A stretch of 64,000 nucleotides of DNA, taken from Oikopleura dioica (Eukaryota; Animalia; Chordata). The stretch spans positions 2,377,929 to 2,441,928 of the forward strand of contig OU015570.1 of the NCBI GenBank assembly GCA_907165135.1. Direction: 5' to 3'. The first letter of the stretch is position 1, and every line of letters begins with the position of its first letter. The translations under genes and the position numbers were made by a program. Of the stretch, positions 15,716 to 58,700 are shown piece by piece. The notes under the pieces are model-generated. The model ran no database searches, was not told the origin of the DNA, and saw only the letters and a list, made by a program, of their open reading frames with translations.

Positions 15716-15740
15716 GCTGGCAAAATAAAATTGAGTTCAG

Positions 15741-19478: not shown

Positions 19479-19803
19479 AGTAGTATAATGTCTGGCTAGG
19501 GCTTAGCTGCAGGCCGCCCTTTCGCCGCGCCGAGTCCAAAATGAAAAAAGTGAAAAAAGGGTGGATTTTGCGCGCTCGACATATGGGGACCCCGGGGCAA
19601 ATACTTGGAAAATATTCAGACTTTGACTAGGGTGGGCAGGCCGTACGGCAGGCCGTTTGGACTCGGTGCAGTTTTGGGCGATTTGCAGCCAGGCTCTAGC
19701 CAGACATTTTACTCAAGTGGTCGATCAAAATTAAGTGGTCAATAAAAACGAGTGGTCAATAAAAACGAGTGGTCAATAAAAGTGGCCGAAAGGCTCTAGA
19801 ATC
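19479..19803 (+). repeat. Polinton left TIR
   Basis: Reverse complement of 58364-58700; the outer about 235 bp are near-identical; the inner part has AATAAAAACGAGTGGTC tandem units in variable number. Confidence 0.97.
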
Positions 19804-20268
19804 GGGGGGATAAAAATTTTAGCGACGAATTGGAAGCTGCCACCGGAAGTGCTTGGAATTGCTGCCACTGGAAGTCGACGGAGAAGCTGTCATCGAAAGT
19901 GGAACCTACTCCGCTGCTGAAACTACAAACGCCGCCCGTAAGCTGGAAAACTCTGCTCTACTCGACGACCGTTGTTCTCTGCAAAAGGTAAAATGAACAC
20001 AGTTTCAGAAATCAAGAACCTTTATTAGCACAATGGGAGCATGGATAGCGATTGGAGCAGAAATGAAGGCGAGCCGTTGATTGGAGGAGGTCTTGTTGGT
20101 CGCTCGCAAATTCACACGCTCGCTGTCGCCGGGTAAAAGTATTTTTCCACGTGACTGGCTTGATGGTACTCAGCTGCTGACCCATTCTAAATGCTCTCAT
20201 CTGATCACTGCACGCTAAAAGAATTTAATAAAGAATCAGTCGCAAATAAATGAAAATCAGGCTAACTT

Positions 20269-20746
20269 TTACTCGGACTCTTTGTCTTCCTTGTTGTCTT
20301 CGAGTTTCATTTCTTTGGCAAGTGCGTCGGCAGCAACTTTGCAAACTTCCTTGACGTCCTCATCGGTAAGGCTGGGCAGGCGAGGCTCATAATCATGCAT
20401 AAAGTACTTCAAATCGTCGGGCATTATGCGAAAGTTGTTTTCGTACATGCAGATGTTGCTCTCGAGTTCTTGCAGGTACTCGCATTTCAGTTGACAAATT
20501 GGGTTGGTGCAAGCCGCCGCCAAAAGACACTGGTAAATGTCAAAGGAGAGCTGATCTTCAAAGACGTGGAATCGTGGAAAGGTGCCGTCCTTGACGAGCT
20601 TGGCGGCAATTTCCTTGAGTTTTGAAATGGTCCATTGGCGGTAAACGGTACCCTGGAAATCTCTTAGCAACAAGTACCCTAGAAGAATTATTAAAAAAGA
20701 TTTTACCTCTGGCATATTTGCAGCGTCTAATAGCTTTCATTGACAT
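20269..20746 (-). CDS. Polinton orphan protein (about 150 aa, one short intron)
   Basis: MSMKAIRRCKYAR joins GYLLLRDFQG... through a GT-AG intron at 20679-20706 (28 nt, unusually short); acidic C-terminus. Confidence 0.5.
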
Positions 20747-22343
20747 GCTAATATAATCATGGGGATTAATAATTCAGCCTTCCCACACGCCCAACAGTTG
20801 TTCTAGAACACCCAAATTGTTGTTGTGGATAATGGTTGGGGTGTTGATGAAATTCCGTATTTTTGCGAAAAAGGGCTCACAATCTCTAGAATTGTTGTCA
20901 ACCTGAGGCCGAAATTTCAAATTTCAATCAGTCGCCACTCGTTGCTCGACACAAAAGCTGCATTTTGCGCTTTCTACGTTTATCATGAAAACTAGGTCCA
21001 AGACCGCTTCCGAACGCCTGCGTGCGAATTCTACCGTGGAAGAAGCAACTGCTGAAGGTAAGTGCGCTACTTCTTTATTTGCAGGGAGAGGGGGGAAATT
21101 TACAGGGCCAAAAAAATCTTCACTTCTTTCGCTTCTGACTGACTGACTTCAAATATCTTCTTGTCCTCTTGGTTCTTGAATTTGAATGGTTGGCAGGTCC
21201 GATTTTCATTGTCGATCTGAAAAGGGTTAGAGTTTAGAGAGAGTTTTCAAAGAAGTCTATTCTTGTGACAGTTGCGAGATCGTTTAGATTCATTTCAAAA
21301 GTTTTCTTTGCAAAACTAAAACGTGTCAGGTTTTCATTTTAGAATGGGAGTCGCAAAGACAGTATACATAGCGTTTCATTTTAATGTCGGTGCGCATGGA
21401 ATGAACGAGGAGATCATAGTTTCATTTTAACATACGTTGCCATGTGAATGAGGAAAATGGTTGCGATTCATTTTATCACTAAACTTGGGCTAGAATCATT
21501 TACGCAACGGGCTCATTTTATTCAAATTCGCTCGGGAATATAGTTGCCAAAGCGGAAATGGTTTCATTTTCTAATCATCTTGGTAACATTCGTGTTTATT
21601 GTTGGGATTCATTTCAAAACAAGTGCGGGAATATTGGCGGCCACGGTCTAGTTTCATTTTAAATTCGAAATGTGCATCAACACCAAAGAGAGTATAGTGT
21701 TTCATTTTAAGCGCAGGGGGAGAAGCTTTGGTACTTTCTCAAAATTTTAAAGTTTCATTTTGTTACGACTCGGACACCACTAAGGTGCGCTTTCAATTTA
21801 ATTGGGCAGATTTGCTTTTCAATTTCCGGCCAAAGTATGCATTAGACCATAGACATATCATACCTTTTTAGAATCCTCTTGGCATGCTCTTTTGCTTTAT
21901 CGAGCCAGAATTCAAAATATCCGGCTTTTATCGGATTTTTTGTCGGTTTTACCGTAAATTAATCGGTTTTTCTCAAATTTGAAATCAAAACTTCTGTATC
22001 CTCTACTCTGCTTTGTTTTCGAGCCGAAAAGCCCATGATGACTCATCGTTGATAAGGTTGAATCTGGCTTTTTATACCCAATAAGAGAAACAACAGCAGA
22101 TACAAAGAAGAAAAAGAGAAAAAGAAGAACTTCAAAAAGAGAATCGAAGCTGGATAGTCTGGTGGTGGAGTAATGACGTCATTTTATCGGTTTCAATAGT
22201 TTTTTGAGGGTTTTTATTGCTTTTTTTCATGGTTTTTTCTCTTTCCATTGGATCATTTTGGAACTAAAAATTATTTAAATTGTATCTAACTCCAACATAG
22301 ACAAAAAAGGAGTTTGAGGACCTTCGGCCACAAATGATCGAGA

Positions 22344-25108
22344 ATGCGAGGAAGATTTTCGATTTGGTTTTTGATCAAGATTTGCGACGGTTACCTGATG
22401 AAAACTCGCGTATCGTTACACGCGCACTTCGAGGTACTAAAAACGACCTTTTTTGGTTTAACAATTATTACAGCAATATTTTGCGGGCTCAAAGAAGATC
22501 TTCCATCTTATTTTGAAGATGTTGATTTTCATAAAATCGATCTTGAAAAGATGCGCAACTACGATCATCAACTCTACAATAAACATCCGAAACGCAACTC
22601 TGGAAATCGAGTTGAGGGTCTGACACGGAAGAAAAGCAACAGATCAATGACAAAAAATGAAGAGATACGAGATGACATGATCCGATTTTTTGAAGAAAAT
22701 TCCGTTCTTGACACAAGATGCAGAAACGAGGCGACGGTTGCTGGAGAAGTGAAGAGAAAACGGCTTCTTCAGAAGCCCTGTTGGGTTTTGCTCCAGAAAT
22801 ACGATGAAGAGAAGAAGAAAGAGGTCGCAGAAAGGCGCCAGCGGAATGAAAATGTGAAAGACCCCCCGAGTATAAGTACTTATCGTCGAATTTATGTTGA
22901 AAACTTCTCGAAATGGCTTCGACTCGCAGACAACAACGCAATATTGAACTGTTATTGCCCAGTACACCTACAAATGGAACTCTTCACATCCGCGATCAAC
23001 AGATATGCGCTTGCAGCTCCCATAACAGATGCTGATCTTGTTGAGTTCTCGATTTGTGAAAATTCTGGCCATCGACTGAAGTGCATAGAAAACTTGTGCG
23101 AGTACTGTAACGATACAGAAATCGGATATGAACATTCAAAAGCAAGACTTGAAGACCATTTTCATGGTGTACCACCAGATGCCGAAATCACTTACGCCCA
23201 ACTTGTTGAAGTCGAACGCACCGATGCCAACCAAAACGCATACAAGAGAGAACAGCTTGTGATGCAACTTGCTACTCGTGACGAGTTCATCGCTGTAGTA
23301 AGCGACTATCTTCAACGTGGTTGCCTTGCTACAGGAGCACAGAGGAAGACCATCAATCACTACGAACTTGTGAGAGAGTCAAAAGACTTCCGAAAAGTGA
23401 ATCTTGGCAACTGTACATATGACAAGGACTCGATGCTTCTTGTCACTGACTATGGTAAGTTAAGAACTCTATCAAAGGATTCTTAAGGCTAGTAAGGGCT
23501 TTATCAGAGGATTCTGAGGGCTAGTCAGGACTTTATCAGATGATTCTGAAGGGTGGTAAGGACAATATCAGATGATTCTGAAGGCTAGTCAGGACTTTAT
23601 CAGACGATTCTGAAGGCTAGTCAGGACTTTATCAGACGATTCTGAAGGCTAGTCAGGACTTTATCAGACGATTCTGAAGGGTAGTAAGGACAATATTAGA
23701 TGATTCTGAGGGCTAGTCAGTACTTTACCAGATGATTCTGAAGGGTAGTTAGGACAATATCAGATGATTCTGAGGGCTAGTCAGGACTTTATCAGATGAT
23801 TCTGAAGGGTAGTAAGGACTATATCTGTGGATTCTGAGGGCTAGTCAGGACTTGACCAGAGGATTCATCAGATAAAGTCCTTGATGGTCTCCAGAATCAT
23901 CAGATAGAGTTCTTGAGAACCTTCGGAATCATCAGATATAGTCCTTGATAGCCTTCAGAATCATCAGAAAAAGTCCTTGATGGGCTTAAGAATCGTCTGG
24001 TAATGTTCTGACATCACTCAAGAATCTCAGCCAATCATAAGGCAGTATTTAAAATTTGAACCAATCAGAAACAAGGATTCTTTCCATGAGCCAATCAGAA
24101 ACCAGTATTCTTTCCTTGAGCCAATCAGAAGCCAGTATTCATAAATTGAGCCAATCAAATCCATTGTTCTATAATTTTATTCTAGCGATGGGAGTCAGCT
24201 GCAGAGAATTATGCGAAACTTCCAATATGCATTTCAAGAGAGACAGTTACCCCTTGCTCTCGATCATAAGCTACGGAGTTGACCAGAACAACAATGCGAA
24301 GAAGATATACAACCATCTTCTAAGCGAGATCCGAGTTGTCAAAGATGTCGAGTTCAGCCTAGCCGGGATCAAATTCGCGCTTGAGAATGCTGTTGCTGCT
24401 GTTGGCCCGAAGAAAAATTTGTGGATTCAGTCAGACGGGGCTGGTATGTGAGTTTAGCATTTTCCGTCAATAACAGAATCTAGAATCTCAATTCTGGTCC
24501 AAAGAAATGTTCTCTACCCTCCCAAGATACTTCAACTTGCTCCAAGCCTATCAATTCCAATCGATTATTTGGTATAAAACAGTCTCTGGGCATGGGAAAG
24601 GTATGTCTCAAAGAAAAATCACACTTAAAATTTGTAAGGAGAGATCGACTCCTCCCACGGATGCGTAAAACAGGACATTGTCCGACAGTACAATCACCTT
24701 GGGGGCTCCGGATTCGGTGGCGAGCGTTTGGAAAATATTGGAGTGGTCGATTCTGCTTCTCAACTCGTAAATTTCCTCAATCAACAACGAAAGGATCATT
24801 TTGGAACTCTTGAGAAGAAAAAAGAAGACAGTAATGGCTACACTCTGGCTGGCCGATACATTTCCGAGTTCATTAATGATCCCAATTTCGTAAAAGAAGG
24901 AGAAAAAATCGCTGGATCTCGAGCATATCATCTTGTTCAACTGGTCAAAGATGAAAATAATCAATGGGATGAAAGAAAACTTTTGTTCAAAAAAAGACCG
25001 ACAGATTCAGTGTGTCCCCGAATTCTACAGAAGAAAGAAGAAAAACATCCATGCCCAACATGTGGTCTTCAACCGTCACTTCATTGGATCCACCATGATC
25101 TTCAATAG
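22344..25108 (+). CDS. transposase (about 650 aa, 3 introns)
   Basis: Introns 23455-24185, 24444-24483 and 24601-24638 splice in frame to give VTDYAMG, QSDGAESQFWSK and GHGKGEIDSSHGCVK; Cys-rich region CYCPVH / CIENLCEYC upstream. Confidence 0.8.
23478..24020. repeat. 32-bp minisatellite with an inverted block (foldback) in transposase intron 1
   Basis: About 12 forward units GATTCTGAAGGCTAGTCAGGACTTTATCAGAT (23478-23860), then about 4-5 diverged inverted units. Confidence 0.85.
24026..24160 (+). promoter_or_regulatory. five CCAAT boxes at about 30-bp spacing
   Basis: RRCCAATCA at about 24030, 24061, 24091, 24121 and 24151; matches the NF-Y consensus. Confidence 0.5.
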
Positions 25109-27332
25109 TTATTTATCTTCAAATCTTTTTTATTTATTATTGAAATTTTTGCCTTTCATATCTTCGCAAAGTGAAGATTTTCTCGTTCGAAATCTACTGC
25201 CAATTAATTCTTTTATCAGAATATTCACCACTGAAAACTGCCAAATAAAAACGGAAACGAAGAAATTTTATATTATTTTTCCCTTATTTAGATGTAAATT
25301 TGAGCCCCAATAGTTTCGGGGATTCCCGTCATGGTTTTCCATAATGGTCAACCGGTGCGCAAGCGTGTTCCTACTGGAAAACGTTTATCACACCGCCCCG
25401 CGAAGGTAAGATTGATTTAAGTTTCAAAATGATCCAATCTGATCTAAAAACCGATAATTTTCAAATTTTACCGAGAAAAAAACCGATTATATAACGACGA
25501 CAACGATAAGAATAATTCAAATCATTTAAATTTTGAATTGGCAAAGGAAAAGAGCCAAAACCGGAATTATTTTCTATTGAAACCGATAAAAATCCGATAA
25601 AAAGTCCGAAATCTGAAAATCCGGCTCGATAAAACAAAAGAGCTGGTCAAGAGGATTCCAAAAAGGTATGATACTCCCCGGGTTTAATGTAAAGTTTTTC
25701 CGGGAATCGAAAAGAAAATCTGCCCAATTAAATTGAAAGCCCACCTAAGTTCTATAAGTCTTGATTCATTTCAGAGTTGACAAAAGAGTACCTTGACTAT
25801 CTACAAGATTCATTTTGGAACCGCAGTTTAATTAAATGGTGAAAGAATACTTGAATCATTTTATATCGTCTACTAAAGGACTCATTTTGGGCGTATCACA
25901 CGTGATATGTCCAGTTAGTAGGAAATTATATGTTTTCAAATTTGCCATCATTTATTTTGTGGCGGTGGCGGCGGACTAAATAAAAGCGTTGAAAATCTTG
26001 GAGCATTTTATAGTCGTTGTTGTCTTCAGGGCTCGATTCGCTTTTCAGAGAGCTTGACAAGATATCTCTCGATTCATTTTACAATACGATTTCGACTGCC
26101 TAAAATTAGAAAAAGTTAGAGTTAGAGCTAAAATAATTTTAATCAGTCATTTCGGTACAGTAGAGTATGTTTATACTGATTGCATTTTATAAAGGGAACA
26201 TTGCAGGAAAATTTTTGCTAGCATTTTATTATAGGTTATATTGGTCGCTTTGCGGAGGATTTTTTTGTCAGCATTTTATTGCCACGAGAAGTAGAGTAAA
26301 GATATTTGACACATTTAATGGATCGGGTTGAAAACGGATAGTACGTTCTTCAAAGGGTTTCATTTTAAACAAATGCCTATCGTAAGGATATCAAGACTCT
26401 GGGGTCATTTTATGTGTCTAATGCGTAGAGATTGTACCAAAATTGGCTTCATTTTAAGAGGGCGACTGAAAAAGAGCCTTATGAACAAAACGCTTCATTT
26501 TATGAAATGGGGGCTTCGAAGAGGCTTATTGAGGGAAGCGTTTCATTTTACGAATATGGGCGCGTGGAAAAGGCCTCATGAATAAAAAGCTTCATTTTAA
26601 TATTAGAAAAATTTCCTTAAAAATGAACTTAACGCTGAACGAAACGTTTCATTTTATATTATCAAGAATCATTTTATTCGTTGTCGGGGATTTGCACTCA
26701 AGTTTCCTTGCGTTTCATTTTATAGTCTACAGAACTTAAAGTATACTGGTCTGTTAGATTTAGCTTCATTTTAAACCCTTTTTCTTTAATAAATGACATA
26801 CTATTGGAATCATTTTAAATGCGCCAGTAGATTTCAGTGCAATAATTTTTGCAGGTTCATTTTAAAAACGTCGATTGAATCTCATTTTCGTGTAGAACAT
26901 TTAGAATCATTTTAAAAACGGGCAGTATGGAACGATTAACAAACAATGTTTAGTATCATTTTACTGTTTTGATTTTTGATCAAATTAAAGTCCATTTTGA
27001 AACATTTTGACGCGTATTGTTGAGAATCATTTCAGTTCAACTAATGAAATTACTAAAAATTTGGAATCATTTAAGCAAAGTTGCAAAACCTAAGTCCCAT
27101 AGCTGATACAGAATTTCATTTTATAAACATAGATCTTTCACTCTTTCTCACTTTCTAAAATCTCTCGGCGTCTCTCTTTTTGCAGATCTCTCATTCTAGT
27201 CTCTTTCTTTTGCTTTCGGATCTCTTTTCCTTCAAGTCATTTTGATGAAAAGTTGTCAAAGTGGCCCACATTTATGCTCCCCAATATTGCGCCCTCAGCG
27301 AAGAACCCTCCATTGATTTTTCTTTTTAGCCG

Positions 27333-29851
27333 TTGCCGACTCCCCACTACGACCAGCTGCTGGATCCGAGCAATCGCAAGGTAATCCCTATTCATTGTCG
27401 ATTTTCCGGAAACAAGTCTTTAGACCTTGAAATCGCGGCCCAGCATGTTGCTTCCGCGGCTGCCGATACAAGCGACGCGCTCTCATCGGTTATCGAGGCT
27501 GGGCAATCAATTCTGCTCGACGAATCGATGGACAGCTTCCACAATCCACCACCTCGACGAAGCTCCTCTCTTCGCGATCCTGCTCCCTTCAACGCCTCTT
27601 CTGGCAACACCACTGGACCCAACAGCTCGTCCTCCTCCGCCGAAAAGACCGTCACCCTCCCACATGTGCGAAACCAATGGGTTAACGAAGGCTCCACTCT
27701 CGTCGAAGAACCCGTTGCTCGCCCAAACGACAACACTACCAGCGCCGTCCCCACCAGCGACTGCTCCTGCGAAGAAAAGTCGCCCAAGCTTCCCCAGAAG
27801 CGCAACTGGGAAATGGATGGATCGACTGATCCTGAGAATCGCCCCCGAAAGCGATTCCAAGACGGCCGCGCTCCTCCCACCAGCTCCAGCGACGACAGTG
27901 TCAACGACACCGATTATCTGCTCGTAATGGGCGCTCCAGGTGCTGCTGAAAAAGCCCAAGAAAAGGCCAAGAGACGTGCTACTGCTGCTGCTCACGCTCG
28001 AGCTTTGAAGATTGTCGAATCTTCCTACCGAGCGTTGGCTCCTTCCGACGGCGACTCCTCTCAACCCGACAGCGACGATTTCGATGGCGTGCTCAACAAG
28101 AGCGAGCCCCGTCGAGTTGTTGTCAACACGAGCGAGGAGAACGACACACCCAACAACTCTCCTGACAGCGACGGCAGCGAGGAGCCCATGCGCACCACCA
28201 ACTTTGACCCCTTTGCAAACAGGGGCGAAAGAGGGCTGGACTTGCGATGGCTCAACAAGCACGATCGCGTTGTCGTCCGCCAGCCTCACCGAAGACCTTC
28301 CGAAGACGCTTCCGGCTCGGACAACGTGTCAATGGAGGTCCACACGTCCGAGTGGAGCGACTCTTCTGCTGCTGGAGCCTTCCTTGGACATCCCACCTCC
28401 TCCTCCTCCTCCTCCTCGCCCCCGTCTGACAGCAACAGCACGCCCAACGCCAGCACCGTTGCCAACGTTGGCACCGTTCTCGCCGATGTCATCGAGGAAA
28501 TGGCCGAATCGATCATGGACATTTCGGATCTGTCAACCTTGACAGATCCCGAGACTCCCACCAACGCTCAGCCCCCACTCGGAAATGGGCTCTCACCCGC
28601 GATGATGGCTGGCGCTCTTACCGGCCTTTGCGACAACGGATTTATCCGTAATATGTCGCCAAAAAAATCGGCTCCGCTCGCTTCTCGATCAAAGGGCCCG
28701 CTTAGCCCTGTTGAAGTGGTCTTGGTTCGCCAGATGGATTCCTCGTCGTCTGGCTACAGCTCTGGCTCAAAGAGCGGCGAAGAAGAGCGAGAGCTGATGG
28801 ACGTGGACCCGATTCTCGCGATCAAGGAGCGAGCTCTTCTTGGCGGCGAAAGCTCAAGCTCCTCCGACGAGCCCACCACCAGCAGTTACAACACCAGCTC
28901 CTCCTTCCCAACTGGCTCTTCTTTTGAGCCCAGCTCAATCAGCGGCAACTCCAACGGCAACTCTTCCTCCAACGGCAACTCCTCTTCCAGCGGCAACTCC
29001 TCCTCCAACGGCAACTCCTCCTCTTCCAACGGCAACACCTCCACCAGCGGCAACTCCTCCTCAAACGGCAACTCCTCCTCAAACGGCAACTACTCTCCCA
29101 ACGGCACCGGCAACACCTTCAAAGGTTCCATCGTCACCGTCTTTGACGAAGTCGATGTTGGCGCCGACCTTGGCGAAACAACCATCGTCGCGCCAGCCAC
29201 GCCTGCTAACCGATCTGTCGTCACCGTACCTGGCGGCAGCGTCGCTGCTCCCGACGAGAGCGTTTTTGTTGGCGGCGCCGACGTAAGCGGCATTTCTGGC
29301 GTCGAGCCCCTCAACGCCACCGGCACCGGCCCTTCTCCCAACGCCACCGTCCTCAACGGCAGCGGCAACGGCACCAACGGCAACTCCACCAACGGCAACT
29401 CCACCAACGGCAACGGCACCTACACCGAGCTCCGATCCGGCGAGAACGGTCAGATTGGCGAGCAGGGCAACATTGTCCTTCGGGCGTACCGACGGGATGG
29501 AACTTTGGGCCGGCCAACCGACTTCAACACCCCGCGAATCTTTCGCATTGAAAGCTTTGTCGAGCCGCCACACAAAGGTACTTTCCATCAAGATAATTTA
29601 AATCGAGAACTTTTAATCAAATCATTTTAATCAAAACTTTCTTAATCAAAATTTAGCTCCGGCCGACGCGACCCCCTTCCAAAAGCAGCTGGTCTCCCTC
29701 AAGAACAACCTCGCCGAGATCTACCTCAACCACGACAACTTCCGCGAGGAATTGGCGAATGGAGAAGTTGGGGCGTTGATCCTCGTCAAAGACGAAAATG
29801 GGCGTGTGACCGCGTTCAAGAATAACATTGTCTTGCAGCGACGAAATTAAC
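27333..29851 (+). CDS. large S/N/G-rich intrinsically disordered orphan protein (>800 aa)
   Basis: 765-codon open exon plus an in-frame second exon after an intron starting at about 29578 (HK|APADATPFQKQL...QRRN*); NGNSSS repeats; start codon uncertain. Confidence 0.75.
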
Positions 29852-29964
29852 GGTTTAAACTCCACGGGAGTCTGTTTTCAAAAATAAATTCAATTAATCT
29901 TTCATATAAAATGCAACTGATTCTTGATATTGATTGCATTTACGAGTGTCTGAGTCGAGCAGAG

Positions 29965-48327: not shown

Positions 48328-50191
48328 TTAACCCCTTCGTCTTCGTTTTGGAGCAGCCTTGGGAGGCGGTGGGATAGTTTCGGCCCTTCGCTTTGTGCCC
48401 CTTGCAGTAGTTTTCATGACCCGAGTACCGCCCACCACAGATGCCTCTGAATAATAATAATAATTAGTGAGTTCCCAAGTGAGTAAATACCTCGAGCTTT
48501 GGCGTCCAAAAACAGCTCTCGCACTGGCAGCCTCATAATCATTGCATCCCATTGTTGCACAAGCGTATCGGCAAATTTGATTTTTGCAGTAACGAGCGCA
48601 GTTTGACCTTCACCATCATTGTCGAAAATGAGCGGCACCAACCAATTTTGCCCTTTAAAGACAAAATAGTCGAGTCCGCTAGCTGTAGCTGCATTCTCCC
48701 ATCGTCCATTGTGTTTCATAAAGTTGATGTAGTGCTGAGTTGCAGTTGACCAAGGAGATCGATATGCAGGCTGACCATCAATGTAAATGGTAAATTCTTG
48801 AATTTTGAAAAATGGATGTTCCATTGTAGTCTTTGAGATGCACTTTTCAAATGTCATTTGACTAGCTTGTGAATAGGGCATTCCTGTGAAAATTATCATT
48901 TTGGGAACAGGTCCTGCGCTCAACTCAATGTCGTACTCGCTCATTCCAGTTCCAAGTGTCTTTCGGGTGAATTTCGGATAGTAAAATGGAATAACACATT
49001 CACCATCCCGTCCAGTTGAAATTGGTCTTTCGGCATCAGTTTTTGGATCGCAAAAGACTGATTCCATCAAAAAATTTCGAGGCTTGAGTCGCTCCTTTGG
49101 ATCCAGCTTGTTTTCCCTGAAAAAGTAGATCATCTTTTCGTCTTCGGCAAAGTTTTCTTGTCCTTCAATTTCTTCTGTCTTGACCATGTCTTCGATGATG
49201 TCGTGGGGGCGCCACCATTTTAGATCCGTTCCATTGGCAGCCGTGGTTTTGATGTCGGTTGCCTTGATGTTGACTTCGTCGTCGCTGTACGGGTCCAATT
49301 CAGAGTTGAACTTTTCAATTACCCGTTTAATTTTTTTAGCCTTTAATTTTTCAGCGCAATCGCATTGGCCCGCATTGTTGTGCTGCCCAATATTTTTTTC
49401 AAAAGTTTGAATTTCTTCGGGAAAGGGCATTCTGACTTGATCTAGCTGGGACATTTTGGCTCGGCACTTTTGAAAGTTGGAATGGCGCATTAAAGCATAA
49501 CACTGCTCATTCATTGTAAGTTCAATTTGTACTCGGGTGCCGGCTGGGAGCACTCGACCCTGTCTGCACAGGCCGTGCATAATGGGAGCCCGAACTTCGT
49601 ACTCGTGAAAGAGTCTCTCATACGGGATCCAGATCTCGTATGCCGTCTTCTTTGACAAATTTTTGCTTTATCTCAGCCGGCTCCCATAGCTCGGTGGCAA
49701 ACTGTTGCCGATTCTCGACCAAATTTAGCTTTTCCCCTCGAAATTAGTGTGATGCACTTTGAAGCGCTCAAGTTCGGGCCCCTCTGCATCAAAAGTGTCA
49801 AACCTTCCCTGGGAGAAAAGCTCGACTTCTTGAGCCACTGTTGATTTGTTGAGTTTGGCCTCACAGTGGCTATAGTGGCCATACTCGGCTGGGTCAAAAG
49901 ACGAAAAGAGCCGAGTATCTGCAATGATAAAGTCCATTTTTTAATGCCCTTGGACAAAATATCATTATCGGGCACATAATTTGAGGGCATTTTAAAATTG
50001 CAGCCAAACATGCACTGCGACAATTTAAGACTGTACTTGTCATCGGGCACTTCAAAACGGGTAATTTCCGGACAGTCATTTTTGCCGAGTCGCGGCACTA
50101 CTTTGTAGCCCTTGTACGGATCCAGAGTTTCTTTGAGTTCGCGCTTTCTTCCGCGAAAGAACATGAGATTTCCATAATTTTCGTTTGCCAT
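48328..50191 (-). CDS. double-jelly-roll major capsid protein (about 600 aa; 2 frameshifts, 1 intron)
   Basis: Polinton MCP-like segments PIMHGLCRQGRVLPAGTRVQIEL, GPVPKMIIFTGM and HPFFKIQEFTIYIDGQP; intron 48447-48490 adds a basic tail KRRRRG. Confidence 0.8.
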
Positions 50192-50582: not shown

Positions 50583-52824
50583 TTAAATTTCAGTCTTGTC
50601 TTTAACAAAATTAATTTCGGGTTCGTAGTAACGGCGATGCAAAGTTTGGCCCTGGGGACCTCGCAAAGAGTAAGTTGGTTCAAAAGTTCCAAAGTGAATA
50701 TCAAAAATTTCGTACAATTCTTTGGTCCACTTTGCGCGCGCCCCTTTCCTAAAGCGGGATGATTTAGCTGCAGGTAAAGTGTCGAGAGGGATTCGAACAA
50801 GATCTCCAATAAAATATTTGGAACTTTTGCCAGTGCGTTCTTCGTACTTGCGCTTGAGTTCCAAATAATCAAAGCTCGCGCGCATTTGCACGATTAACGC
50901 TACTGGGAGCACGATTAATTGCGCTATGCACAGAATTATTGTAGGCAACATTGACATCTTGAAGAATGTGTATCCAGCGGCGAATTCCGTTGTGCGATGC
51001 GAAATAGAGCTCCAAACGATCTTCCAGCGTGCGACTTAAGTTATCCGTTTGAATTTAACAAATTAAAATTGCATGCAAAAGCTATCAATTATTCAACGCA
51101 CTTGAATCGCTCAGCAAGAGCAGCTTTTACGCCGGTTAGCTTTACGGGCGTCATGTTCCAGTCGTCGAGCAGAAGCGCAACTTCCCCTTGAATTCGTTTC
51201 CTTGATCCGTCATAAACATGGTGTGCCCAGGCAAATCTAGCGTGGAAAATATGTCGCCCAAAAGCTGAGCGCATTCGGCAGATGATTTGGTTTTCATGGG
51301 GCGCACAAAAGATTGCCGAGACAATCCGTCTACAACTACCAAAATGTATGGATAGCCAGAGTTGACGGTGGCATCGTTTTTGTACGCTTCGATTGTATCT
51401 GCATAAAGACACGTGTAGAGTCCAGTTGCAATGACGGGATTTCGCCTAAACTTTTTGACAAGCGGCTTGTGGCGAGAAAGCACTTCATTGCGCCGCTTCA
51501 TTTTTGCCACATCGAGCCGCGAATATGCAGTTGGCTCGTTGAAATTGTAGAATAAATTTTGACTGTTGTTGGGTTGTTGTTGTTGTTGTTGTTGTTCTTG
51601 TTGTTGATTTGGTTGTTGCTGGCGTTGTTCCCGCTGGCGTTGTTCCCGCTGCTGCTGCTCATTTCCAAAAATTGGAAAGGTCCTTGATTGGGGCTCCTTC
51701 GGGCTCGGGGTCGCTTGATTCGCGCGATTCGACTGAGTCGGAGTCGACTTCTTCGTCGTCGTCGCCGATGGTGGCGGTGGTGTGACCAGGTTCAACTTTG
51801 ACTGCGGTGACCTTAGGTTGAGCATCTTTGCTATTCTTTGGGATCTCTCCAAATTGCTTTCGGAATTGGGCAGACCGCTTTGCAAAACTGTCCTTGGCAT
51901 CATGTCCGGCAAATCCAACGGGTTCCCGAATTGATCTACTGTCCGTTGGCTCGAGCTCGGGCTGCTGGTGGGGATTTCCATCGGCTCCGAAAAAGTAGTC
52001 TTTTGGGTACCACTGCTTGGTTGGAGCAAATCGGGGAAAGTCGTCTTGCCGCTCTTCTCGCCCCCCACGCATTGGGTCAAAAAAGAAAGGCCGCGGCTCT
52101 GGGTGAGCAAAGCCGGAGTAAGAATCGGTTTGACGACTGTAGGGCCAGTTGGATCTCCTAGCCCTGCTCTGTTGAGCTCCTCGGTCATCGTATCTTGCCA
52201 TTTTGCCGCCGCCTGGACTGGGTTCAAATCGGACCCGCTTGGATCTGGGTTCAAATTTTTGTTCAAATTTTTGATCAAATTTTTGTTCGAATCTGGGGTC
52301 AAATCTGGGGTCAAATCTGGGGTCAAATCTTGGGTCGAATCGGGGGTCAAATCGGGGGTCGAATCTTGGGTCAAATAGGGGTTCATAATAGTCGGGTTCG
52401 TAATGGCGAGGTTCGTATTCGCGAGGCTCGTATCTTGGCTCGTATCTGGAATCGTGCCTTGGCTCGGGATGGGAACCATGCTTTGGTACATGCCGTGGCT
52501 CGTGCCTTGGTTCATGCCTTGGCTCGTGCCTTGGCTCATGCCTTGGCTCATGCCTTGGCTCATGCCTTGGCTCATATTCGCCTCTGGGCGGTCCAGCGGA
52601 AGTGGAGTTTTCCGCGGCCGGCCTCGGGGCCTCTTCGTTGTCTGCAAATCTTTTTGGTGAGTCTTCTGATTCGACTTCGTATTCTTGTTGCGTCGGCTCG
52701 ATGTCAATGTTTCTAGGCCTGTAGGAGTACGATTTTCCCATTGGAATGGCTCGGTTTGAAAATCTTGCAACCATTTGGGCGGTTCGCGTCTCCTCTTCGG
52801 TGTAGTCCGGGTAGGGTTCGCCAT
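50583..52824 (-). CDS. int: retroviral-type (Polinton) integrase with long low-complexity N-terminus
   Basis: YADT...GYPYILVVVDGLSR, MTDQGNEFKG, AALAERF|NRTLE (intron 51035-51101), YNNSVHSAI, GDLVRI, KWTKELY, RRYYEPEI; frameshifts at about 51185 and 50872. Confidence 0.92.
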
Positions 52825-52939
52825 TTGCGCGAGGGCCGCGGGCCCTTACCCTACCTGTGTCGGGATTGTACTCGATGTCGTCAAACAGATGTCCAAATTC
52901 AGTTGGAGTCAGACTAAAGTATACACTCGCTGTTTTCAT
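51659..52939 (-). CDS. 426-codon ORF overlapping the integrase frame (EPRH/FDPR repeats); may be the true integrase N-terminus
   Basis: Open for 426 codons in a second frame; ends at an A5 run at about 51667-51671. Confidence 0.5.
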   Translation of the reverse strand: MKTASVYFSLTPTEFGHLFDDIEYNPDTGRVRARGPRANGEPYPDYTEEETRTAQMVARFSNRAIPMGKSYSYRPRNIDIEPTQQEYEVESEDSPKRFADNEEAPRPAAENSTSAGPPRGEYEPRHEPRHEPRHEPRHEPRHEPRHEPRHVPKHGSHPEPRHDSRYEPRYEPREYEPRHYEPDYYEPLFDPRFDPRFDPRFDPRFDPRFDPRFDPRFEQKFDQKFEQKFEPRSKRVRFEPSPGGGKMARYDDRGAQQSRARRSNWPYSRQTDSYSGFAHPEPRPFFFDPMRGGREERQDDFPRFAPTKQWYPKDYFFGADGNPHQQPELEPTDSRSIREPVGFAGHDAKDSFAKRSAQFRKQFGEIPKNSKDAQPKVTAVKVEPGHTTATIGDDDEEVDSDSVESRESSDPEPEGAPIKDLSNFWK

Positions 52940-53097
52940 TCACTCCCATGCGCCGCGCTCATTATGCCTCTCTCTAGTAATCAATCTAGGATTAATATTT
53001 AATTCTCCCTTAAATCAGTTTTTTCATAATTTTGAGTGCGCCACCTACAAAAATCGGACCCAATATAAACTGCGGTTTCATCTACAAAAGTACAAAA

Positions 53098-53925
53098 ATG
53101 TCTTCAATCATGGAACAACTCCGCCGGGAGCAAGAGTCTCCCGAAAAAGAGAATTCACTTCCATCGCCCTCTGATAATCGGCCTGAGCCGTCAGATTTTC
53201 GCGTACCTGAGCCGCCTCAGAGAAAACGAAAAAGGAGCAGCTCCCCATCCCCAACTCGAATCAGCAAAAAGGCCCTCTTGGACTTTTTATTCGGCGCCGA
53301 AGATCAACCCTCAACTTCGAGAGCAATCGAGACCACTCCTGAAGACAACAACGACAAATCTCAACCCAAGTCGCCAAAGAAGCGCAAGCACATTCCTCCA
53401 CGACCAGCATCTAGCTCCGACGACGAAGACGACGGTGACGACGAAGACGACTGCACCCCCGAGCCTTCCGTCAAGAAAGCCAAAGCCGCCCCCTACACGC
53501 CGACCTTTATAAAGATCCAAACCGCGTTTCCAATCTTGGAGAAGGAGGAGGAATCTCTCTCGGCGCCATTTTTGGCGCTCATCGACGGACACAAGCTCTC
53601 CAATCCTCCCAAGGGCACCTACTGGATCAACTTGCTCATTGAGCGAAGCGTTCGCAAAGACACGAGCCCCCGATTTGATTTTGAAAAGCTGTTGAAGCGA
53701 GGATCGCGCATTCAGTGCGTTATTAATCTCCACAGTTTTAATCCCAAGAAGCGAGACGACGTCGAGTTCAAAAAGTACTTGCCCACAGTTTTGGATCAAG
53801 GAGGAAAAGTCGTCGTCTTTCTGCGAGCACGAGTCGAGCCCAAAAAGCCCGAATATCAACGGGCCTTTGAGCCTAAAGGCTATTTCAAATCCAAGTTTCT
53901 CTTGCCACTCAAGTCGACAGAATGA
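53098..53925 (+). CDS. Polinton orphan protein (acidic/Pro-rich N-half, globular C-half)
   Basis: Intron-free ORF; AAAATG start at about 53098; its stop overlaps the ATPase start (ATGA). Confidence 0.7.
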   Translation: MSSIMEQLRREQESPEKENSLPSPSDNRPEPSDFRVPEPPQRKRKRSSSPSPTRISKKALLDFLFGAEDQPSTSRAIETTPEDNNDKSQPKSPKKRKHIPPRPASSSDDEDDGDDEDDCTPEPSVKKAKAAPYTPTFIKIQTAFPILEKEEESLSAPFLALIDGHKLSNPPKGTYWINLLIERSVRKDTSPRFDFEKLLKRGSRIQCVINLHSFNPKKRDDVEFKKYLPTVLDQGGKVVVFLRARVEPKKPEYQRAFEPKGYFKSKFLLPLKSTE

Positions 53926-54657
53926 TCGGCTCAAGTTTTCTTGGTAAGTACTTTGGGGACACGCGGCTCAAACATCCATTTGCGGCGATTATTAGCGGAA
54001 GTACGGGCACAGGCAAGACCCACGTAGCTAAACAGCTCATTGAAAAAGAGGGCATAAGGGGAAGAATTTCGACCATTTATTACTTTATGCCCCGCCTGGA
54101 GCCTTTGAACATTAAACCCCCAGCCCATCAGCGATTATTTTTGATGGAAGGTCTCCCCACTAGAAAATGGGTTGATGACACGTTTAAAGAGACCCAGCGC
54201 GACACTCTGATTATTTTCGACGATCAGTGGGCAGAGTGCGTTGAAAACCGGGCAATCGAATATCTCTTTGTTTATGGGAGACGCCATCTGGGGATTAGTT
54301 TAATTGGCATCACCCAAAATTTTTATCAAAAGTCGAAAAGCTCCACCCTCTATCGGTTTGAATTTTCTAGAATTGCCTCAACTAATTGTTTATTTTAGCA
54401 ATTGCATGACATGCTTTGTCTTGCTGCCGAATCATGTAGACTCGTCAATCAACGCCACCATCGCCACCAAGCTCGGCTACAGCGCCTGCTACAAAGCCGC
54501 CCGAAAGCTCTTCAAAGAACGTCGATGCCGGTACCAGTACGTTATAATTAGAAAAGACGTAGAAGATCCGACGACGCCGACCTTTTATACAAACGCCTTT
54601 TCTGACATTCCCGAGTTGGGGCCAAACCCCGTCTTCTTTGAAGAAAACGACGAGTAA
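53922..54657 (+). CDS. A32/FtsK-like DNA packaging ATPase (one intron)
   Basis: RLKHPFAAIISGSTGTGKT (Walker A); LIIFDD (Walker B); GRRHLGISLIGITQNFY; intron 54356-54398 joins LYR|NCMTCFVLLPN. Confidence 0.92.
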
Positions 54658-54901: not shown

Positions 54902-55456
54902 CTAAAAATTGCGACCGCAAATATCAAGGACGCGGCCATTGGCCGATCGGATCAAAATTTTGACCCGCTCCGCGCGCAGATCGTTGACAAGGCGATGCTC
55001 TTGGGTCTCTTCGGCGTCGAGGATGTCGCACATTTCCTTGGCGAAGGCGGCGCGCTCGAGAACGGTGTTGGCCTGGGTGAGGCGGAGGAATCGAAGGTTG
55101 TCTAAATAAAAGTTAGTTGAGCATTTTTTCGAGCTACTCTTACCTTCGAAAATAGAAGCGCCGTCGATGCAGTAGCTCAGCTGGTCAGCGTCCACGTCGA
55201 CAAAGTTGACGCCATTTGGCGCGCGAGTGGGATACTTGGGCGCGGGAGGAGCCAACGGAACTCGCTGAGGCTGGGCCTCTTGGTAGGTGCGCTGGTTTTC
55301 CTGCTGTCGCTGCTGCTGTCGCTGTGGCTGGGGCTGCTGCTCGCCCTTTTTCTTGCCGCCAAAGAAGGGCATCTTTCCTCGGCCAACTTCGGGAGCTTCA
55401 GCGGGCTGGGAGAGCGTTCTCGAGGCAGCTGCCAACTTGGCGCTTGCTCGTGCCAA
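54902..55456 (-). CDS. Polinton orphan protein (Q-rich, probably one intron)
   Basis: 184-codon ORF with a GTAAGA...TTTAG intron-like stretch near 55105-55144. Confidence 0.5.
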   Translation of the reverse strand: MARASAKLAAASRTLSQPAEAPEVGRGKMPFFGGKKKGEQQPQPQRQQQRQQENQRTYQEAQPQRVPLAPPAPKYPTRAPNGVNFVDVDADQLSYCIDGASIFEGKSSSKKCSTNFYLDNLRFLRLTQANTVLERAAFAKEMCDILDAEETQEHRLVNDLRAERVKILIRSANGRVLDICGRNF

Positions 55457-55781: not shown

Positions 55782-57104
55782 TTAATTTTCTTCTTGGACG
55801 ACGACGGGGCGCAGAGTTTCTTCGACTTGGCGACCGTTGAGCAGTGGATCGGCGGCTTGTCCTTGCGGCGGCAAAATTGGAACTGGCATTCTATTTGCGC
55901 CAAGAATGAATCTCGGTCGTCCAAAAGATTGGACCTGAAAATTTTCAAAGGGCACATCGTTTGTGCGCGTACGAACCCGGTCAATAAAGATTCGATGGGG
56001 ATTAATGTCGGCGCGGATGATTCGAGGAAAGACGGGATTGTAGAAGCTGTTGCGAAAATCTTGGACGAGCGAGGCGTTTCCATTGTTGCCAGTGACAAAG
56101 AGCACACCGTTCCAGGGAATTTTTTCGCGGCAACATTTGACGCGAAAAGGTGAAACCGCGTAGTCGAATTCAACATCTCCACCGCCACCAGTAGTTGCAA
56201 CATAGAGCTCACGTCTGCGCCGGCGCTCGGCATCGAGGCGACCAATGTAATCCTCGAGGCGATCTGCGGTGAAAGCACAACAGCCGATTTTTTGCTGGCG
56301 AAGTTTCACTGTTTTTACGCTTTCGGTGAACCTTCGCAAATCGTAATCGGTCATTTTTTCTAGCTCGTACTGCTCAATCGGAAGAAATTGGCCAAGGATG
56401 CGGCGGACTTGATCGTTGGCGGTCTCTTGGTCAAAAGTTTTGTCCTTGTAAAAGCGGTCACGCAGCGTAGTTTCAGCAAACAACACCAGAGTCGAGTTGA
56501 AAAGCTTGTTCGAATAGCCGCTGAATCGCTTTCGCATGTCGTGAAAATAGGTTTCGTAGCGCGGGTACTGAACGCGATTGTAGGGCATTGAAAATTTTTG
56601 ATTTTTCAGCGAGTCGGCGTCGCGAGAGTATTCAATTTCGTAGGAGCGGCAAGTGTACTCGTTGTTGCTATCAGTCGTGTGCATCATTGTGGGGCGATTC
56701 GAGTTGAGCAGCGGGCCACTTTTTCGAAGTCCTCCTTGAGCAATGTCGACAACGGGAATCAGACATCTTTGGCCCTTGGTCGAGTAGGTTTCCGGATCAA
56801 CTAGAATTTATTAGAAGGTGAGAGAACATTTCAACATACCGGTGACACGATGAACTACAATTTTGAGCCCAATTTTTTCGACGCCATTTTCCCTGTATCT
56901 CTGAGGAATAAATTCAAAACTTTCGTCGCTGGGAACTCCGCAAACTCGAGTCGGGCGAACTTCGATTGATCGGAATTCGTCTTCATAGTTGACGCCGATC
57001 AACGGTACTTGGTTCAGGCCAATCTTTGAGGCAATTTCCACCTTTTTCATGGGCATTTTTAAATGTGACAATTGAGTCCAAAATTCCACCCAGTCCAGCT
57101 CCAC
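55782..57104 (-). CDS. probable minor capsid (penton-like) protein, about 430 aa, one intron
   Basis: Intron 56801-56839 joins ORF 56811-57104 in frame to ORF 55782-56687; the C-terminal IIRADINPHRIFID...VPF...FGRPRF resembles the Polinton minor-capsid pattern only weakly, by eye. Confidence 0.45.
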
Positions 57105-57266
57105 CAGTGCTCCTCCACTCGATATCCATATGCCGAGATCAATTATTCAGTCCAACGGTATTCCGCTCAATCGAAATCTACTGATAAACGGTTCAAAGGA
57201 TACAGCACGTCAGAGAGAGATCATTCATCGGCAAGAGAAGACATCATTCATCAGCCAGAGAACAAA

Positions 57267-57419
57267 ATGCCAAAACGAAACTTTAAAAAGTCTTTTCTTG
57301 GAGTCGACGGCAGCGTCTACTGCTACGAGTGCTACTTGGAAAATCGACCTCACGCTCACCTCATGTTCAAGCCCTACATCTTTTGCTCCATTTGCAAAGC
57401 CGAGTTGACTTGGAGTTAA
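57267..57419 (+). CDS. 50-aa CxxC-x17-CxxC zinc-binding peptide with a VxCxE motif
   Basis: MPKRNFKKSFLGVDGSVYCYECYLENRPHAHLMFKPYIFCSICKAELTWS; AAAATG start context. Confidence 0.55.
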   Translation: MPKRNFKKSFLGVDGSVYCYECYLENRPHAHLMFKPYIFCSICKAELTWS

Positions 57420-57840: not shown

Positions 57841-57862
57841 TCAGCAAGCACGTGGACGACAA

Positions 57863-58075
57863 TCAAAAGAGAACAGAGATGGTGCTGCCAAAGGCGTTAT
57901 TGATGGCAGCTTTGCTTCCGTAGCTGACCGTGTAGTCGACGATATTTTTTTCTTGCTGCTTGCAGATGATCTTGAGCTTCCTGCGCAGTCGCTGGCTCTT
58001 GGTTCGCAAAAACGGCACATTTTTCTTTTGGAGGGTTTTTCCAATCTTTTTCGTAAAGCCCTTGAGAGAAAACAT
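57863..58075 (-). CDS. small basic orphan ORF
   Basis: 70 codons, K/R-rich, preceded by an acceptor-like TGAATA/CAACTG region; may be one exon of a longer gene. Confidence 0.3.
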   Translation of the reverse strand: MFSLKGFTKKIGKTLQKKNVPFLRTKSQRLRRKLKIICKQQEKNIVDYTVSYGSKAAINNAFGSTISVLF

Positions 58076-58363
58076 TATTCAGTTGCTGTAGATATTGATT
58101 TTAAATGACAACTAGAAAATTGGAGCGCATTTATACCTACCTCGGTTTCTAGCGCCAATTTTTCACGCCTTGTGTTATTGGAATTTGATTTAATCAATTT
58201 AGATTGGACCGCAATCGAAGCATCATCTACATCCAGCATCTACATCTTCCGCCAGCTGTGCCACCATCGTCCTGCAATAAAGCCTTCTTCCGCGAAAATG
58301 GGTGCAACTTGTCGTTATTTATGCAGATAAGATCTTTTGAAATTTAAAATTTCACGCCCCAGG

Positions 58364-58700
58364 ATTCTAGAGCCTAGCGGCCACTTTTATTGACCACTCG
58401 TTTTTATTGACCACTTTATTTTTTATCGAACGATTTATTTTATTGACCACTTAATTGACCACTCGAGTAAAATGTCTGGCTAGAGCCTGGCTGCAAATCG
58501 CCCAAAACTGCACCGAGTCCAAACGGCCTGCCGTACGGCCTGCCCACCCTAGTCAAAGTCTGAATATTTTCCAAGTATTTGCCCCGGGGTCCCCATATGT
58601 CGAGCGCGCAAAATCCACCCTTTTTTCACTTTTTTCATTTTGGACTCGGCGCGGCGAAAGGGCGGCCTGCAGCTAAGCCCTAGCCAGACATTATACTACT
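58364..58700 (-). repeat. Polinton right TIR
   Basis: Ends CATTATACTACT followed by the TSD GTCTAT. Confidence 0.97.

What the first reader, a model, noticed from the sequence alone, without database searches (positions are those of the whole stretch)
19479..58700. A 35-39 kb Polinton-like endogenous virus, about twice the usual size, with a bipartite genome
Seen: the right part holds the core module (pPolB, MCP, basic peptide, INT, ATPase, probable penton). The left part (27.3-41.5 kb) is a co-oriented block of about 9 orphan genes, and the two converge near AATAAA signals at about 41900. Net length is 35.3 kb without the nested transposon. Established: typical Polintons are about 15-25 kb and gene-compact. 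Inference: a distinct, probably virion-competent lineage with a large host-interaction module.
Basis: partly seen in the sequence, partly recalled or inferred. Interest (0 to 1): 0.9.

Follow-up and report, generated by a model that had tools for sequence, protein, structure and literature searches.

The report
Large Maverick element on Oikopleura Y
A 39-kb virus-like transposon (Maverick/Polinton) sits in the male-specific chromosome region of the tunicate Oikopleura dioica and carries a 14-kb block of unknown genes. As assembled, its polymerase and capsid genes are interrupted, and cargo-carrying Mavericks of this size are already known.

Summary
The element spans 19479-58700 (39,222 bp). 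Its inverted ends are identical over the outer 236 nt, it has AG..CT termini and it is flanked by a 6-bp duplication, GTCTAT. The host is Oikopleura dioica: a Y-specific-region gene model of the Okinawa assembly matches the window's capsid gene exactly. The right part encodes a protein-primed polymerase with solid support. Support is weaker for a retroviral-type integrase, an A32-type ATPase and a capsid protein whose low-confidence model matches double-jelly-roll capsids. No protease was found and the "penton" could not be tested. As assembled, polymerase and capsid genes are interrupted by frame changes and stops. Short introns or Nanopore errors could explain part of this. The left block (27.3-41.4 kb) is truly coding-like on the + strand, GC3-rich and low in complexity. 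It has three membrane-anchor-like segments and no detectable homologues. Gene number is open. It most resembles the GC-rich cargo region of nematode Mavericks, only larger. Published sizes for such elements (10-50 kb) include 39 kb, and Mavericks are already listed among O. dioica Y-chromosome repeats. Verdict: a real new member of a known kind. "Virion-competent" is not supported for this copy, and the origin of the left block is unsettled.

The parts
19479..58700 (.). Whole Maverick/Polinton element, 39,222 bp
   Evidence: TIR pair, AG..CT termini and 6-bp TSD
19473..19478 (.). Left target-site duplication GTCTAT
58701..58706 (.). Right target-site duplication GTCTAT
19479..19821 (+). Left terminal inverted repeat. 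The outer 236 nt are identical to the right arm. It is itself a fold-back (arms 19482-19519/19676-19713) and carries three subterminal copies of a 15-nt repeat at 19733-19781.
   Evidence: (DNA fold z = -4.7)
58345..58700 (-). Right terminal inverted repeat, with the mirror fold-back (58466-58503/58660-58697) and four subterminal 15-nt repeats at 58385-58464
20269..20715 (-). 148-aa ORF in the left arm. Composition is coding-like (GC2 0.28, GC3 0.57). No family or structure match.
21780..25749 (.). Nested TIR transposon of 3,970 bp: 185-nt arms 77% alike, 3-bp TAA flank on both sides, a 32-bp tandem array and a 380-aa ORF without a Pfam match. It is not shown to interrupt a gene of the host element.
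27333..41433 (+). Left block: GC-rich (0.50-0.63), C-skewed, + strand coding-like region of low-complexity orphan ORFs
   Evidence: no homologues
27333..29630 (+). 765-aa ORF, rich in Ser/Gly/Asn/Pro, with 32 N-X-S/T sequons and 18-nt coding repeats. AATAAA follows at 29883.
31213..31731 (+). Membrane-anchor-like segment (31243-31299, hydropathy 2.9) followed by a sequon-rich acidic ORF
36213..37635 (+). Two ORFs. The first has a signal-peptide-like start and a Pro/Thr/Ser-rich stretch. The second has a strong membrane segment (37108-37164, hydropathy 3.1) and a charged tail. A 46-nt-arm inverted repeat lies in the spacer between them.
37673..38455 (+). 260-aa ORF with 12-nt (Glu-Pro-Lys/Thr) coding repeats
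38597..39601 (+). Region open in two + frames (334 and 330 aa). The Pro/Thr-rich frame ends in a membrane-anchor-like segment (39522-39578).
39484..41433 (+). Higher-complexity ORFs, including a 175-aa ORF at 40283-40810 with GC1/2/3 of 0.59/0.36/0.65. No homologue found.
41434..42055 (.). AT-rich zone where the two halves converge, with a T-rich tandem repeat (41689-41833) and AATAAA on both strands
42056..48258 (-). [quoted passage not shown] Uninterrupted relatives of 1,807-1,849 aa align to 43120-48108. O. dioica gene models of other copies extend the match to 42059.
48328..50191 (-). Capsid-like gene, given as one part and interrupted as assembled. It includes a basic C-terminal exon joined by an annotated intron.
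50583..52939 (-). Integrase region, given as one part: a low-complexity N-terminal region with 12-nt repeats, an rve catalytic core, and a possible C-terminal continuation that was not tested
53032..53925 (+). 297-aa Lys/Pro/Ser-rich ORF abutting the ATPase gene, function unknown
53922..54657 (+). A32/IVa2-type packaging ATPase region, given as one part. Walker A and B motifs are present and the reading frame changes at least once.
54902..55456 (-). 184-aa ORF with a Gln/Pro/Arg-rich N-terminus, function unknown
55782..56687 (-). The assignment is unverified.
56811..57419 (.). Two small ORFs, 97 aa (-) and 115 aa (+, Cys-rich C-terminus), function unknown

Best explanation
This is an integrated copy of a Maverick/Polinton virus-like transposon of the tunicate Oikopleura dioica. 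It lies in the repeat-rich Y-specific region, inside an older LTR-bounded element. It belongs to a host-wide family: a second copy on the Y region, and more distant copies on the X region, the pseudo-autosomal region and chromosome 1. Relatives with uninterrupted genes occur in marine metagenomes. Shown here: the retroviral-type integrase class of insertion (TIRs, 6-bp duplication) and a protein-primed polymerase with all six family-B motifs readable. Inferred from established knowledge of Polintons: replication starts at the inverted ends, and a capsid-plus-ATPase module could package the DNA. The 14-kb left block is most likely accessory or cargo DNA that travelled inside the element (my estimate about 0.6). 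It is comparable to the GC-rich cargo region next to a TIR in nematode Mavericks. It is transcribed on the + strand towards the polymerase gene in two or more units. Its products are low-complexity Ser/Thr/Pro/Asn-rich proteins, of which at least three look membrane-anchored. A surface or host-interaction role is inference only (about 0.25). As assembled, this copy cannot make full-length polymerase or capsid protein, so it is probably a decaying or non-autonomous copy rather than a competent virus.
For: TIR, TSD and termini. Host and location: the Y-region gene model g17168 is identical to the window's capsid ORF over 321 aa and then to the next exon. Other copies and metagenome relatives. 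pPolB: relatives pass Pfam PF03175 at 41-61 bits against a cut-off of 25.8, and the Exo I-III and Pol A-C motifs are readable in the translations. Integrase: rve at 24.2 bits and foamy-virus integrase cores at E = 0.02. ATPase: Pox_A32 at 21.7 bits, IVa2, and Walker A/B motifs. Capsid: Foldseek's top hit is an adintovirus capsid (E = 1e-6), followed by NCLDV, Sputnik, mavirus, PBCV-1 and D13 capsid proteins. Left block on the + strand. Tandem periods inside its ORFs are multiples of three. Membrane segments and sequons. Interruptions. Analogy: nematode Mavericks have a 2-5 kb cargo region of high GC next to a TIR (bioRxiv 10.1101/2022.07.12.499685).
Against: No homologue of any left-block ORF was found, not even from the second Y copy. 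Those blanks are weak, because of the search tool's length limits and low-complexity flooding. I could not check whether other copies carry the block. Its GC3 (0.6-0.8) differs from both the core genes (0.44-0.58) and the flanking ORFs (0.43-0.46), which fits neither a simple viral nor a simple host origin. Integrase and ATPase hits are below Pfam's cut-offs. The capsid model is of low confidence (pLDDT 37.6). No protease was found and the penton is unverified. The outer 236 nt of the two TIRs are identical, which sits uneasily with about eight disabling changes arising after insertion. Some may therefore be introns, assembly errors (1.3% error reported, PMC8008620) or older than the insertion.
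Confidence: 0.6

Rival explanations
1. The left block is a passenger: host-derived or horizontally acquired DNA captured by this copy or a small sublineage, with no role in the element's own cycle.
For: Codon composition is unlike the core genes. Pfam matched no family (viral or cellular) in any ORF scanned. There is no hit from the second Y copy. Its position next to a TIR matches nematode Maverick cargo.
Against: No O. dioica host protein matched either, although both host proteomes are in the searched collection (weak because of length limits). GC3 also differs from the flanking ORFs. The block is co-oriented and ends in a shared termination zone with the polymerase gene.
Confidence: 0.3
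2. The left block entered after integration, by a rearrangement or an unrecognised nested insertion in the repeat-rich Y region, so the mobile element proper is only about 21 kb.
For: The locus is a nest of elements: LTR element, then Polinton, then TIR element. GC rises sharply at about 27.3 kb and falls at about 41.5 kb.
Against: No direct or inverted repeat pair and no duplication brackets the block. No transposase, RT or integrase signature lies inside it.
Confidence: 0.1
3. The copy is in fact intact and virion-competent. The apparent interruptions are short O. dioica introns or Nanopore assembly errors.
For: The outer 236 nt of the TIRs are identical. All polymerase motifs are readable. 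One short intron is annotated in the capsid gene. Median intron length in this genome is 49 nt and the assembly error rate is 1.3% (PMC8008620).
Against: Metagenome relatives have the same genes as single uninterrupted ORFs. Two or more frame changes come with no extra DNA that could be an intron, and at least one stop in the capsid gene lies opposite aligned residues. The annotators' capsid model starts downstream of the interruptions. No protease was found.
Confidence: 0.15

Closest known systems
Polintons/Mavericks of animals, for example the 'intact' vertebrate Mavericks (PMC8097293)
   Same: TIRs, 6-bp TSD, pPolB, rve integrase, packaging ATPase, capsid-like gene, genes arranged in modules.
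   Different: Intact vertebrate elements have eight intronless conserved ORFs. Here the polymerase is about 1,800 aa, at least one intron is annotated, no protease was detected, and a 14-kb extra block is present. This copy is interrupted.
Cargo-carrying Mavericks of nematodes (bioRxiv 10.1101/2022.07.12.499685)
   Same: A high-GC region of poorly conserved genes lies between one TIR and the core genes, inside an otherwise typical Maverick.
   Different: Nematode cargo regions are 2-5 kb and hold recognisable genes (protease, kinase) plus a gB-like fusogen. Here the block is 14 kb, holds only low-complexity orphans, and no fusogen was recognised (structure not tested).
Adintoviruses (PMC8502044)
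   Same: Best Foldseek match of the capsid-like protein. Both are animal-associated members of the same virus supergroup with pPolB and integrase.
   Different: Adintoviruses are known as exogenous genomes. No sequence-level match to a named adintovirus protein came back from any search here, and membership was not tested.
Maverick (MAV) repeats annotated on the O. dioica Y chromosome (PMC5240408)
   Same: Same host, same chromosome, same repeat class.
   Different: That paper only lists the class. In the searchable literature I found no description of gene content, size or a left block.

Membership tests
Polinton/Maverick | Long terminal inverted repeats | tested here: met
   250-nt arms, outer 236 nt identical
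Polinton/Maverick | 6-bp target-site duplication and AG..CT termini | tested here: met
   GTCTAT on both sides; ends read AG and CT
Polinton/Maverick | [quoted passage not shown] | tested here: met
   The 522-aa piece finds relatives at E = 1e-93 to 1e-106 that pass PF03175. Motifs are readable. The gene is interrupted as assembled.
Polinton/Maverick | Retroviral-type (rve) integrase | tested here: met
   rve at E = 4e-5 but 24.2 bits, below the 32.6 cut-off, on a truncated piece. Foamy-virus integrase core at E = 0.02. The insertion footprint fits.
Polinton/Maverick | FtsK/A32-type packaging ATPase | tested here: inconclusive
   Pox_A32 at 21.7 bits against a 22.8 cut-off, IVa2 at 18.4 bits, Walker A and B present. 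No PDB match.
Polinton/Maverick | Double-jelly-roll major capsid protein | tested here: inconclusive
   No Pfam or PDB sequence hit. The AlphaFold model of a relative is poor (pLDDT 37.6). Even so, Foldseek hits are dominated by DJR capsid proteins: adintovirus capsid at E = 1e-6, then Sputnik, mavirus, PBCV-1 and D13.
Polinton/Maverick | Penton (minor capsid) protein | tested here: inconclusive
   The 301-aa candidate has no family or PDB hit and its model is unusable (pLDDT 31.9).
Polinton/Maverick | Adenain-like cysteine protease | tested here: not met
   No Peptidase_C5-type or other protease hit in any ORF or stop-free stretch scanned at E up to 1. A divergent or split gene cannot be excluded.
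Cargo-carrying Mavericks (nematode type) | High-GC cargo region between a TIR and the core genes | tested here: met
   GC 0.50-0.63 over 27.3-41.4 kb against 0.44-0.50 in the core
Cargo-carrying Mavericks (nematode type) | gB-like fusogen | tested here: inconclusive
   No Pfam hit in any ORF.
Cargo-carrying Mavericks (nematode type) | Cargo shared or exchanged among copies or species | not tested
This needs DNA of other copies.
Adintoviridae | Exogenous linear genome with particles | not testable with these tools
   Only an integrated copy is in hand.

The most novel reading that the evidence does not exclude
The left block is a conserved, virus-encoded module of mucin-like, membrane-anchored glycoproteins shared by this larvacean Maverick lineage and its uninterrupted marine relatives. 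That would mark a chordate-infecting Maverick group with a surface-glycoprotein arm, in parallel to the fusogen capture seen in nematodes.
Probability: 0.12. Interest if true: 0.75.

Novelty: new member of a known kind. Interest (0 to 1): 0.4.

Why it matters
O. dioica has the most compact chordate genome, with few mobile elements, most of them on the Y. A young, fully bounded 39-kb Maverick shows what still invades this genome and how the Y collects nested insertions. Marine metagenomes hold relatives with uninterrupted polymerase and capsid genes. This hints that a related virus may circulate in the sea, possibly in larvaceans, which matter for ocean carbon flux. If the 14-kb block proved to be shared among copies, it would extend Maverick cargo carriage from nematodes to chordates.

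Tried and rejected
- **Left-block homology searches:** blank for the 765-aa ORF (candidate list flooded by low-complexity words) and for the 175-aa ORF. Pfam was blank for 20 left-block ORFs or stretches. The one PDB sequence search was blank. There is no paralogy within the window.
- **Capsid identification by sequence:** Pfam and PDB profile searches were blank.
- **AlphaFold:** the capsid relative with a 6-row alignment gave pLDDT 37.6. The penton candidate as a single sequence gave pLDDT 31.9. The second model was not sent to fold search because it would be meaningless.
- **Protease hunt:** nothing in the ORFs and stop-free stretches of at least 65 aa scanned in both arms. A UCH hit at E = 0.09 on the 148-aa left-arm ORF was rejected as noise.
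- **Extra polymerase domain:** none found in the long N-terminal half.
- **Nested TIR element and LTR element interiors:** no family assigned.
- **Naming more distant polymerase relatives:** all are unnamed metagenome proteins.
- **Rejected idea, left block as a nested LTR or TIR element:** no bracketing repeats.
- **Rejected idea, - strand coding of the block:** the longest - strand open stretch is within the shuffle range.
Full report
**1. Observation**

The window holds a 39,222-bp element at exactly the coordinates given. Its arms, 19479-19728 and 58451-58700, are 99% complementary over 250 nt. The outer 236 nt are identical, and looser similarity runs on to about 19821 and 58345. The ends read AG..CT, and the hexamer GTCTAT flanks both sides. 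This is far beyond chance: the terminal 32-mer occurs twice in the window against 0 expected.

Each arm is itself a fold-back; a DNA fold of the left arm gives z = -4.7. Each arm also carries a 15-nt subterminal repeat, three copies on the left and four on the right, against 0.17 expected.

A 3,970-bp TIR element with a 3-bp TAA flank is nested at 21780-25749.

**2. Host and setting**

The capsid-like ORF finds Oikopleura dioica proteins.
- Gene model OKI2018_I69.YSR.g17168 is identical to the window over 321 residues. It then continues, across an annotated intron, with the basic C-terminal peptide that the window encodes just downstream.
- The window therefore comes from, or is identical to, the Y-specific region of the Okinawa assembly of this tunicate, which is an animal.
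- A second Y-region copy gives models g17137 (capsid, 83% identical) and g17140 (polymerase, 97% identical over its best 149-residue stretch, 84% mean over all matched stretches).
- More distant members lie on the X-specific region, the pseudo-autosomal region and chromosome 1, and in the Bergen assembly.
- The literature describes the Y as gene-poor, heterochromatic and the main sink of mobile elements. It lists 'MAV, maverick' among Y repeats (PMC5240408).
- The Okinawa assembly is Nanopore-based, with a stated error rate of 1.3% and a median intron of 49 nt (PMC8008620).
- The whole element lies inside an LTR-bounded element: 361-nt direct repeats, 2 mismatches, TG..CA ends, and a GTAT flank on both sides. 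The locus is thus a three-level nest.

**3. Core module**

*Polymerase.* A 522-aa piece finds 201 proteins among 1.84 billion representatives.
- The best are O. dioica models and unnamed marine metagenome ORFs of 1,807-1,849 aa at 38-44% identity.
- Those relatives pass Pfam DNA_pol_B_2 at 41-61 bits.
- The Exo I-III and Pol A-C motifs of family B polymerases can be read in the window's translations (motif definitions from general knowledge).
- Relatives align across 43120-48108. Host gene models of other copies extend the match to 42059.
- An 1,800-aa polymerase is long for this class. The more distant hits are 900-1,400 aa. No extra domain was recognised in the N-terminal half.

*Integrase.* There is an rve core at E = 4e-5 but below Pfam's cut-off on a truncated piece. 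Foamy-virus integrase cores match at E = 0.02.

*ATPase.* Hits are Pox_A32 at 21.7 bits (cut-off 22.8) and adenovirus IVa2, with Walker A and B motifs present.

*Capsid.* No family or PDB sequence hit came back.
- A model of an uninterrupted relative built from a 6-row alignment was poor (pLDDT 37.6), with only the C-terminal beta-rich part above 55.
- Even so, Foldseek put an adintovirus capsid first (E = 1e-6), followed by giant-virus capsid proteins.
- The PDB list is dominated by PBCV-1, Sputnik, iridovirus, vaccinia D13 and mavirus capsid proteins at E = 0.003-0.02.
- I read this as support for a jelly-roll capsid protein, not proof.

The 'penton' (301-aa ORF) could not be tested. No protease was found.

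**4. State of the genes (counts only)**

These counts are measured against uninterrupted relatives.

| Gene | Interruptions as assembled |
|---|---|
| Polymerase | 4-5 changes of reading frame. At least two carry no extra DNA, one carries 30 nt or more of extra DNA, the rest are unclear. Also 1-2 in-frame stops. |
| Capsid-like gene | One frameshift-like change and two in-frame stops. At least one stop lies opposite aligned residues. One annotated intron is not a break. |
| Integrase | At least one interruption, kind unresolved. |
| ATPase | At least one interruption, kind unresolved. |

One nested transposon lies in the left arm and is not shown to hit a gene.

Caveats:
- Short introns and Nanopore indel errors could account for part of this.
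- The perfect outer TIRs argue that little time has passed since insertion. Some changes may therefore predate it, which would mean a non-autonomous copy mobilised by others (inference).
- Either way, 'virion-competent' is not supported for this copy. The uninterrupted metagenome ORFs suggest that the wider lineage may be.

**5. Left block**

From 27.3 to 41.4 kb, GC is 0.50-0.63 with a steady C excess on the + strand.
- **Coding signal.** The + strand has 41 stop-free stretches of at least 100 aa against 13.8 +/- 3.0 in local shuffles, and the longest is 766 aa against at most 307. The - strand's longest is within the shuffle range.
- **Repeat periods.** Tandem repeats inside the GC-rich ORFs have periods of 9, 12, 15 or 18 nt, all multiples of three. 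The repeats in AT-rich stretches outside those ORFs have other periods (25, 23 and 32 nt), apart from one 21-nt array.
- **Codon composition.** GC3 is 0.45-0.81, and 0.6-0.8 in most ORFs, often C-ending. Core genes have 0.44-0.58 and flanking ORFs 0.43-0.46.
- **Predicted products.** They are rich in Ser/Thr/Pro/Asn/Gly. The 765-aa ORF has 32 N-glycosylation sequons. Three strong membrane-anchor-like segments lie on the + strand. One follows a signal-peptide-like start and a Pro/Thr-rich stretch. Another closes a Pro/Thr-rich frame.
- **Homology.** No Pfam family, no PDB sequence and no protein in the 5.8-billion-cluster collection matched the ORFs tried. There is no paralogy within the block. 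These blanks are weak because the search tool only sees proteins of 0.55-1.75 times the query length, and low-complexity words flooded one search.
- **Gene number.** Only four AATAAA lie on the + strand (29883, 30912, 41389, 41897). The block could be as few as two or three transcription units, so 'about 9 genes' is open.
- **Boundaries.** No repeat pair brackets the block.

**6. How it most likely works**

Shown: insertion of the integrase type with a 6-bp duplication, and a polymerase of the protein-primed class.

Inferred from what is established for Polintons: replication primed at the inverted ends, where the fold-back termini and subterminal repeats are candidate recognition sites, and packaging by the ATPase into a jelly-roll capsid.

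The left block is most likely accessory or cargo DNA carried within the element and transcribed towards the polymerase gene. The two halves end in a shared AT-rich zone with AATAAA on both strands. Its products look like secreted or membrane mucin-like proteins. A role at the cell or particle surface is a guess.

**7. Comparison with known systems**
- **Animal Mavericks.** The anatomy matches. Intact vertebrate elements have eight intronless ORFs, TIRs and 6-bp duplications in two modules (PMC8097293).
- **Nematode Mavericks.** These are the closest parallel for the left block. A 2-5 kb region of high GC, low conservation and intron-bearing genes next to one TIR is read there as cargo. Here the block is 14 kb and holds only orphans.
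- **Size.** Sizes of 10-50 kb are quoted for these elements (PMC11131425), so 39 kb is large but not outside the range.
- **Prior description.** Only three open papers mention Oikopleura together with Maverick, and none gives a gene set.

**8. Verdict**

This is a real, cleanly bounded new member of a known kind. Its notable traits are a large orphan block, a very long polymerase and fold-back termini. Interest is moderate.

Noticed in passing
window 15342-15702 and 63311-63671: 361-nt direct repeats (2 mismatches) with TG..CA ends and a GTAT flank on both sides bracket the whole Polinton. It looks like an LTR element of about 9.1 kb (8.4 kb interior) into which the Polinton inserted. A purine tract and a TGG-start site suggest - strand orientation. 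No RT or integrase domain was found in its interior.
   Followed up: partly
window 21780-25749: Nested TIR transposon with 185-nt arms (77% alike), a TAA flank on both sides (a PIF/Harbinger-like footprint), a 32-bp tandem array at 23399-24026 and a 380-aa ORF with no Pfam match. Its family is unassigned.
   Followed up: partly
window 19482-19713 and 58466-58697: Each Polinton TIR is an internal fold-back of about 230 nt (38-nt arms 82% alike; single-strand DNA fold z = -4.7). The element's ends could therefore form hairpins.
   Followed up: partly
window 19733-19781 and 58385-58464: A 15-nt subterminal direct repeat (GAGTGGTCAATAAAA) occurs three times on the left and four times on the right, 7 matches against 0.17 expected. 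It is a possible binding site for the integrase or the replication proteins.
   Followed up: partly
window 36958-37003 / 37041-37086: An inverted repeat with 46-nt arms (83% alike) lies in the spacer between two left-block ORFs. Its nature is unknown.
   Followed up: no
window 870-941 (-): Rfam tRNA match at 34.5 bits (cut-off 29) that ARAGORN does not call. It may be a degenerate tRNA or a tRNA-derived repeat.
   Followed up: no
window 15700-16021; 61813-62733: Tandem arrays inside the LTR-bounded element: a 23-bp array next to one LTR and 125/187-bp repeats near the other.
   Followed up: no
window 29946-30398: Two AT-rich tandem arrays (25-bp x6 and 21-bp x6) lie in the gap after the 765-aa ORF. 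They may be intergenic or regulatory sequence of the left block.
   Followed up: no
proteins P0009, P0156, P0012, P0003, P0004: Marine metagenome contigs of 2.4-9.4 kb encode uninterrupted relatives of the polymerase (1,807-1,849 aa) and the capsid-like protein (560-570 aa) at about 40% identity. The source organism or virus is unknown.
   Followed up: partly
window 16122-16721 (-): A 199-aa ORF with a RING-H2 finger (zf-RING_2, 29.5 bits, above cut-off) lies inside the LTR-bounded element.
   Followed up: no
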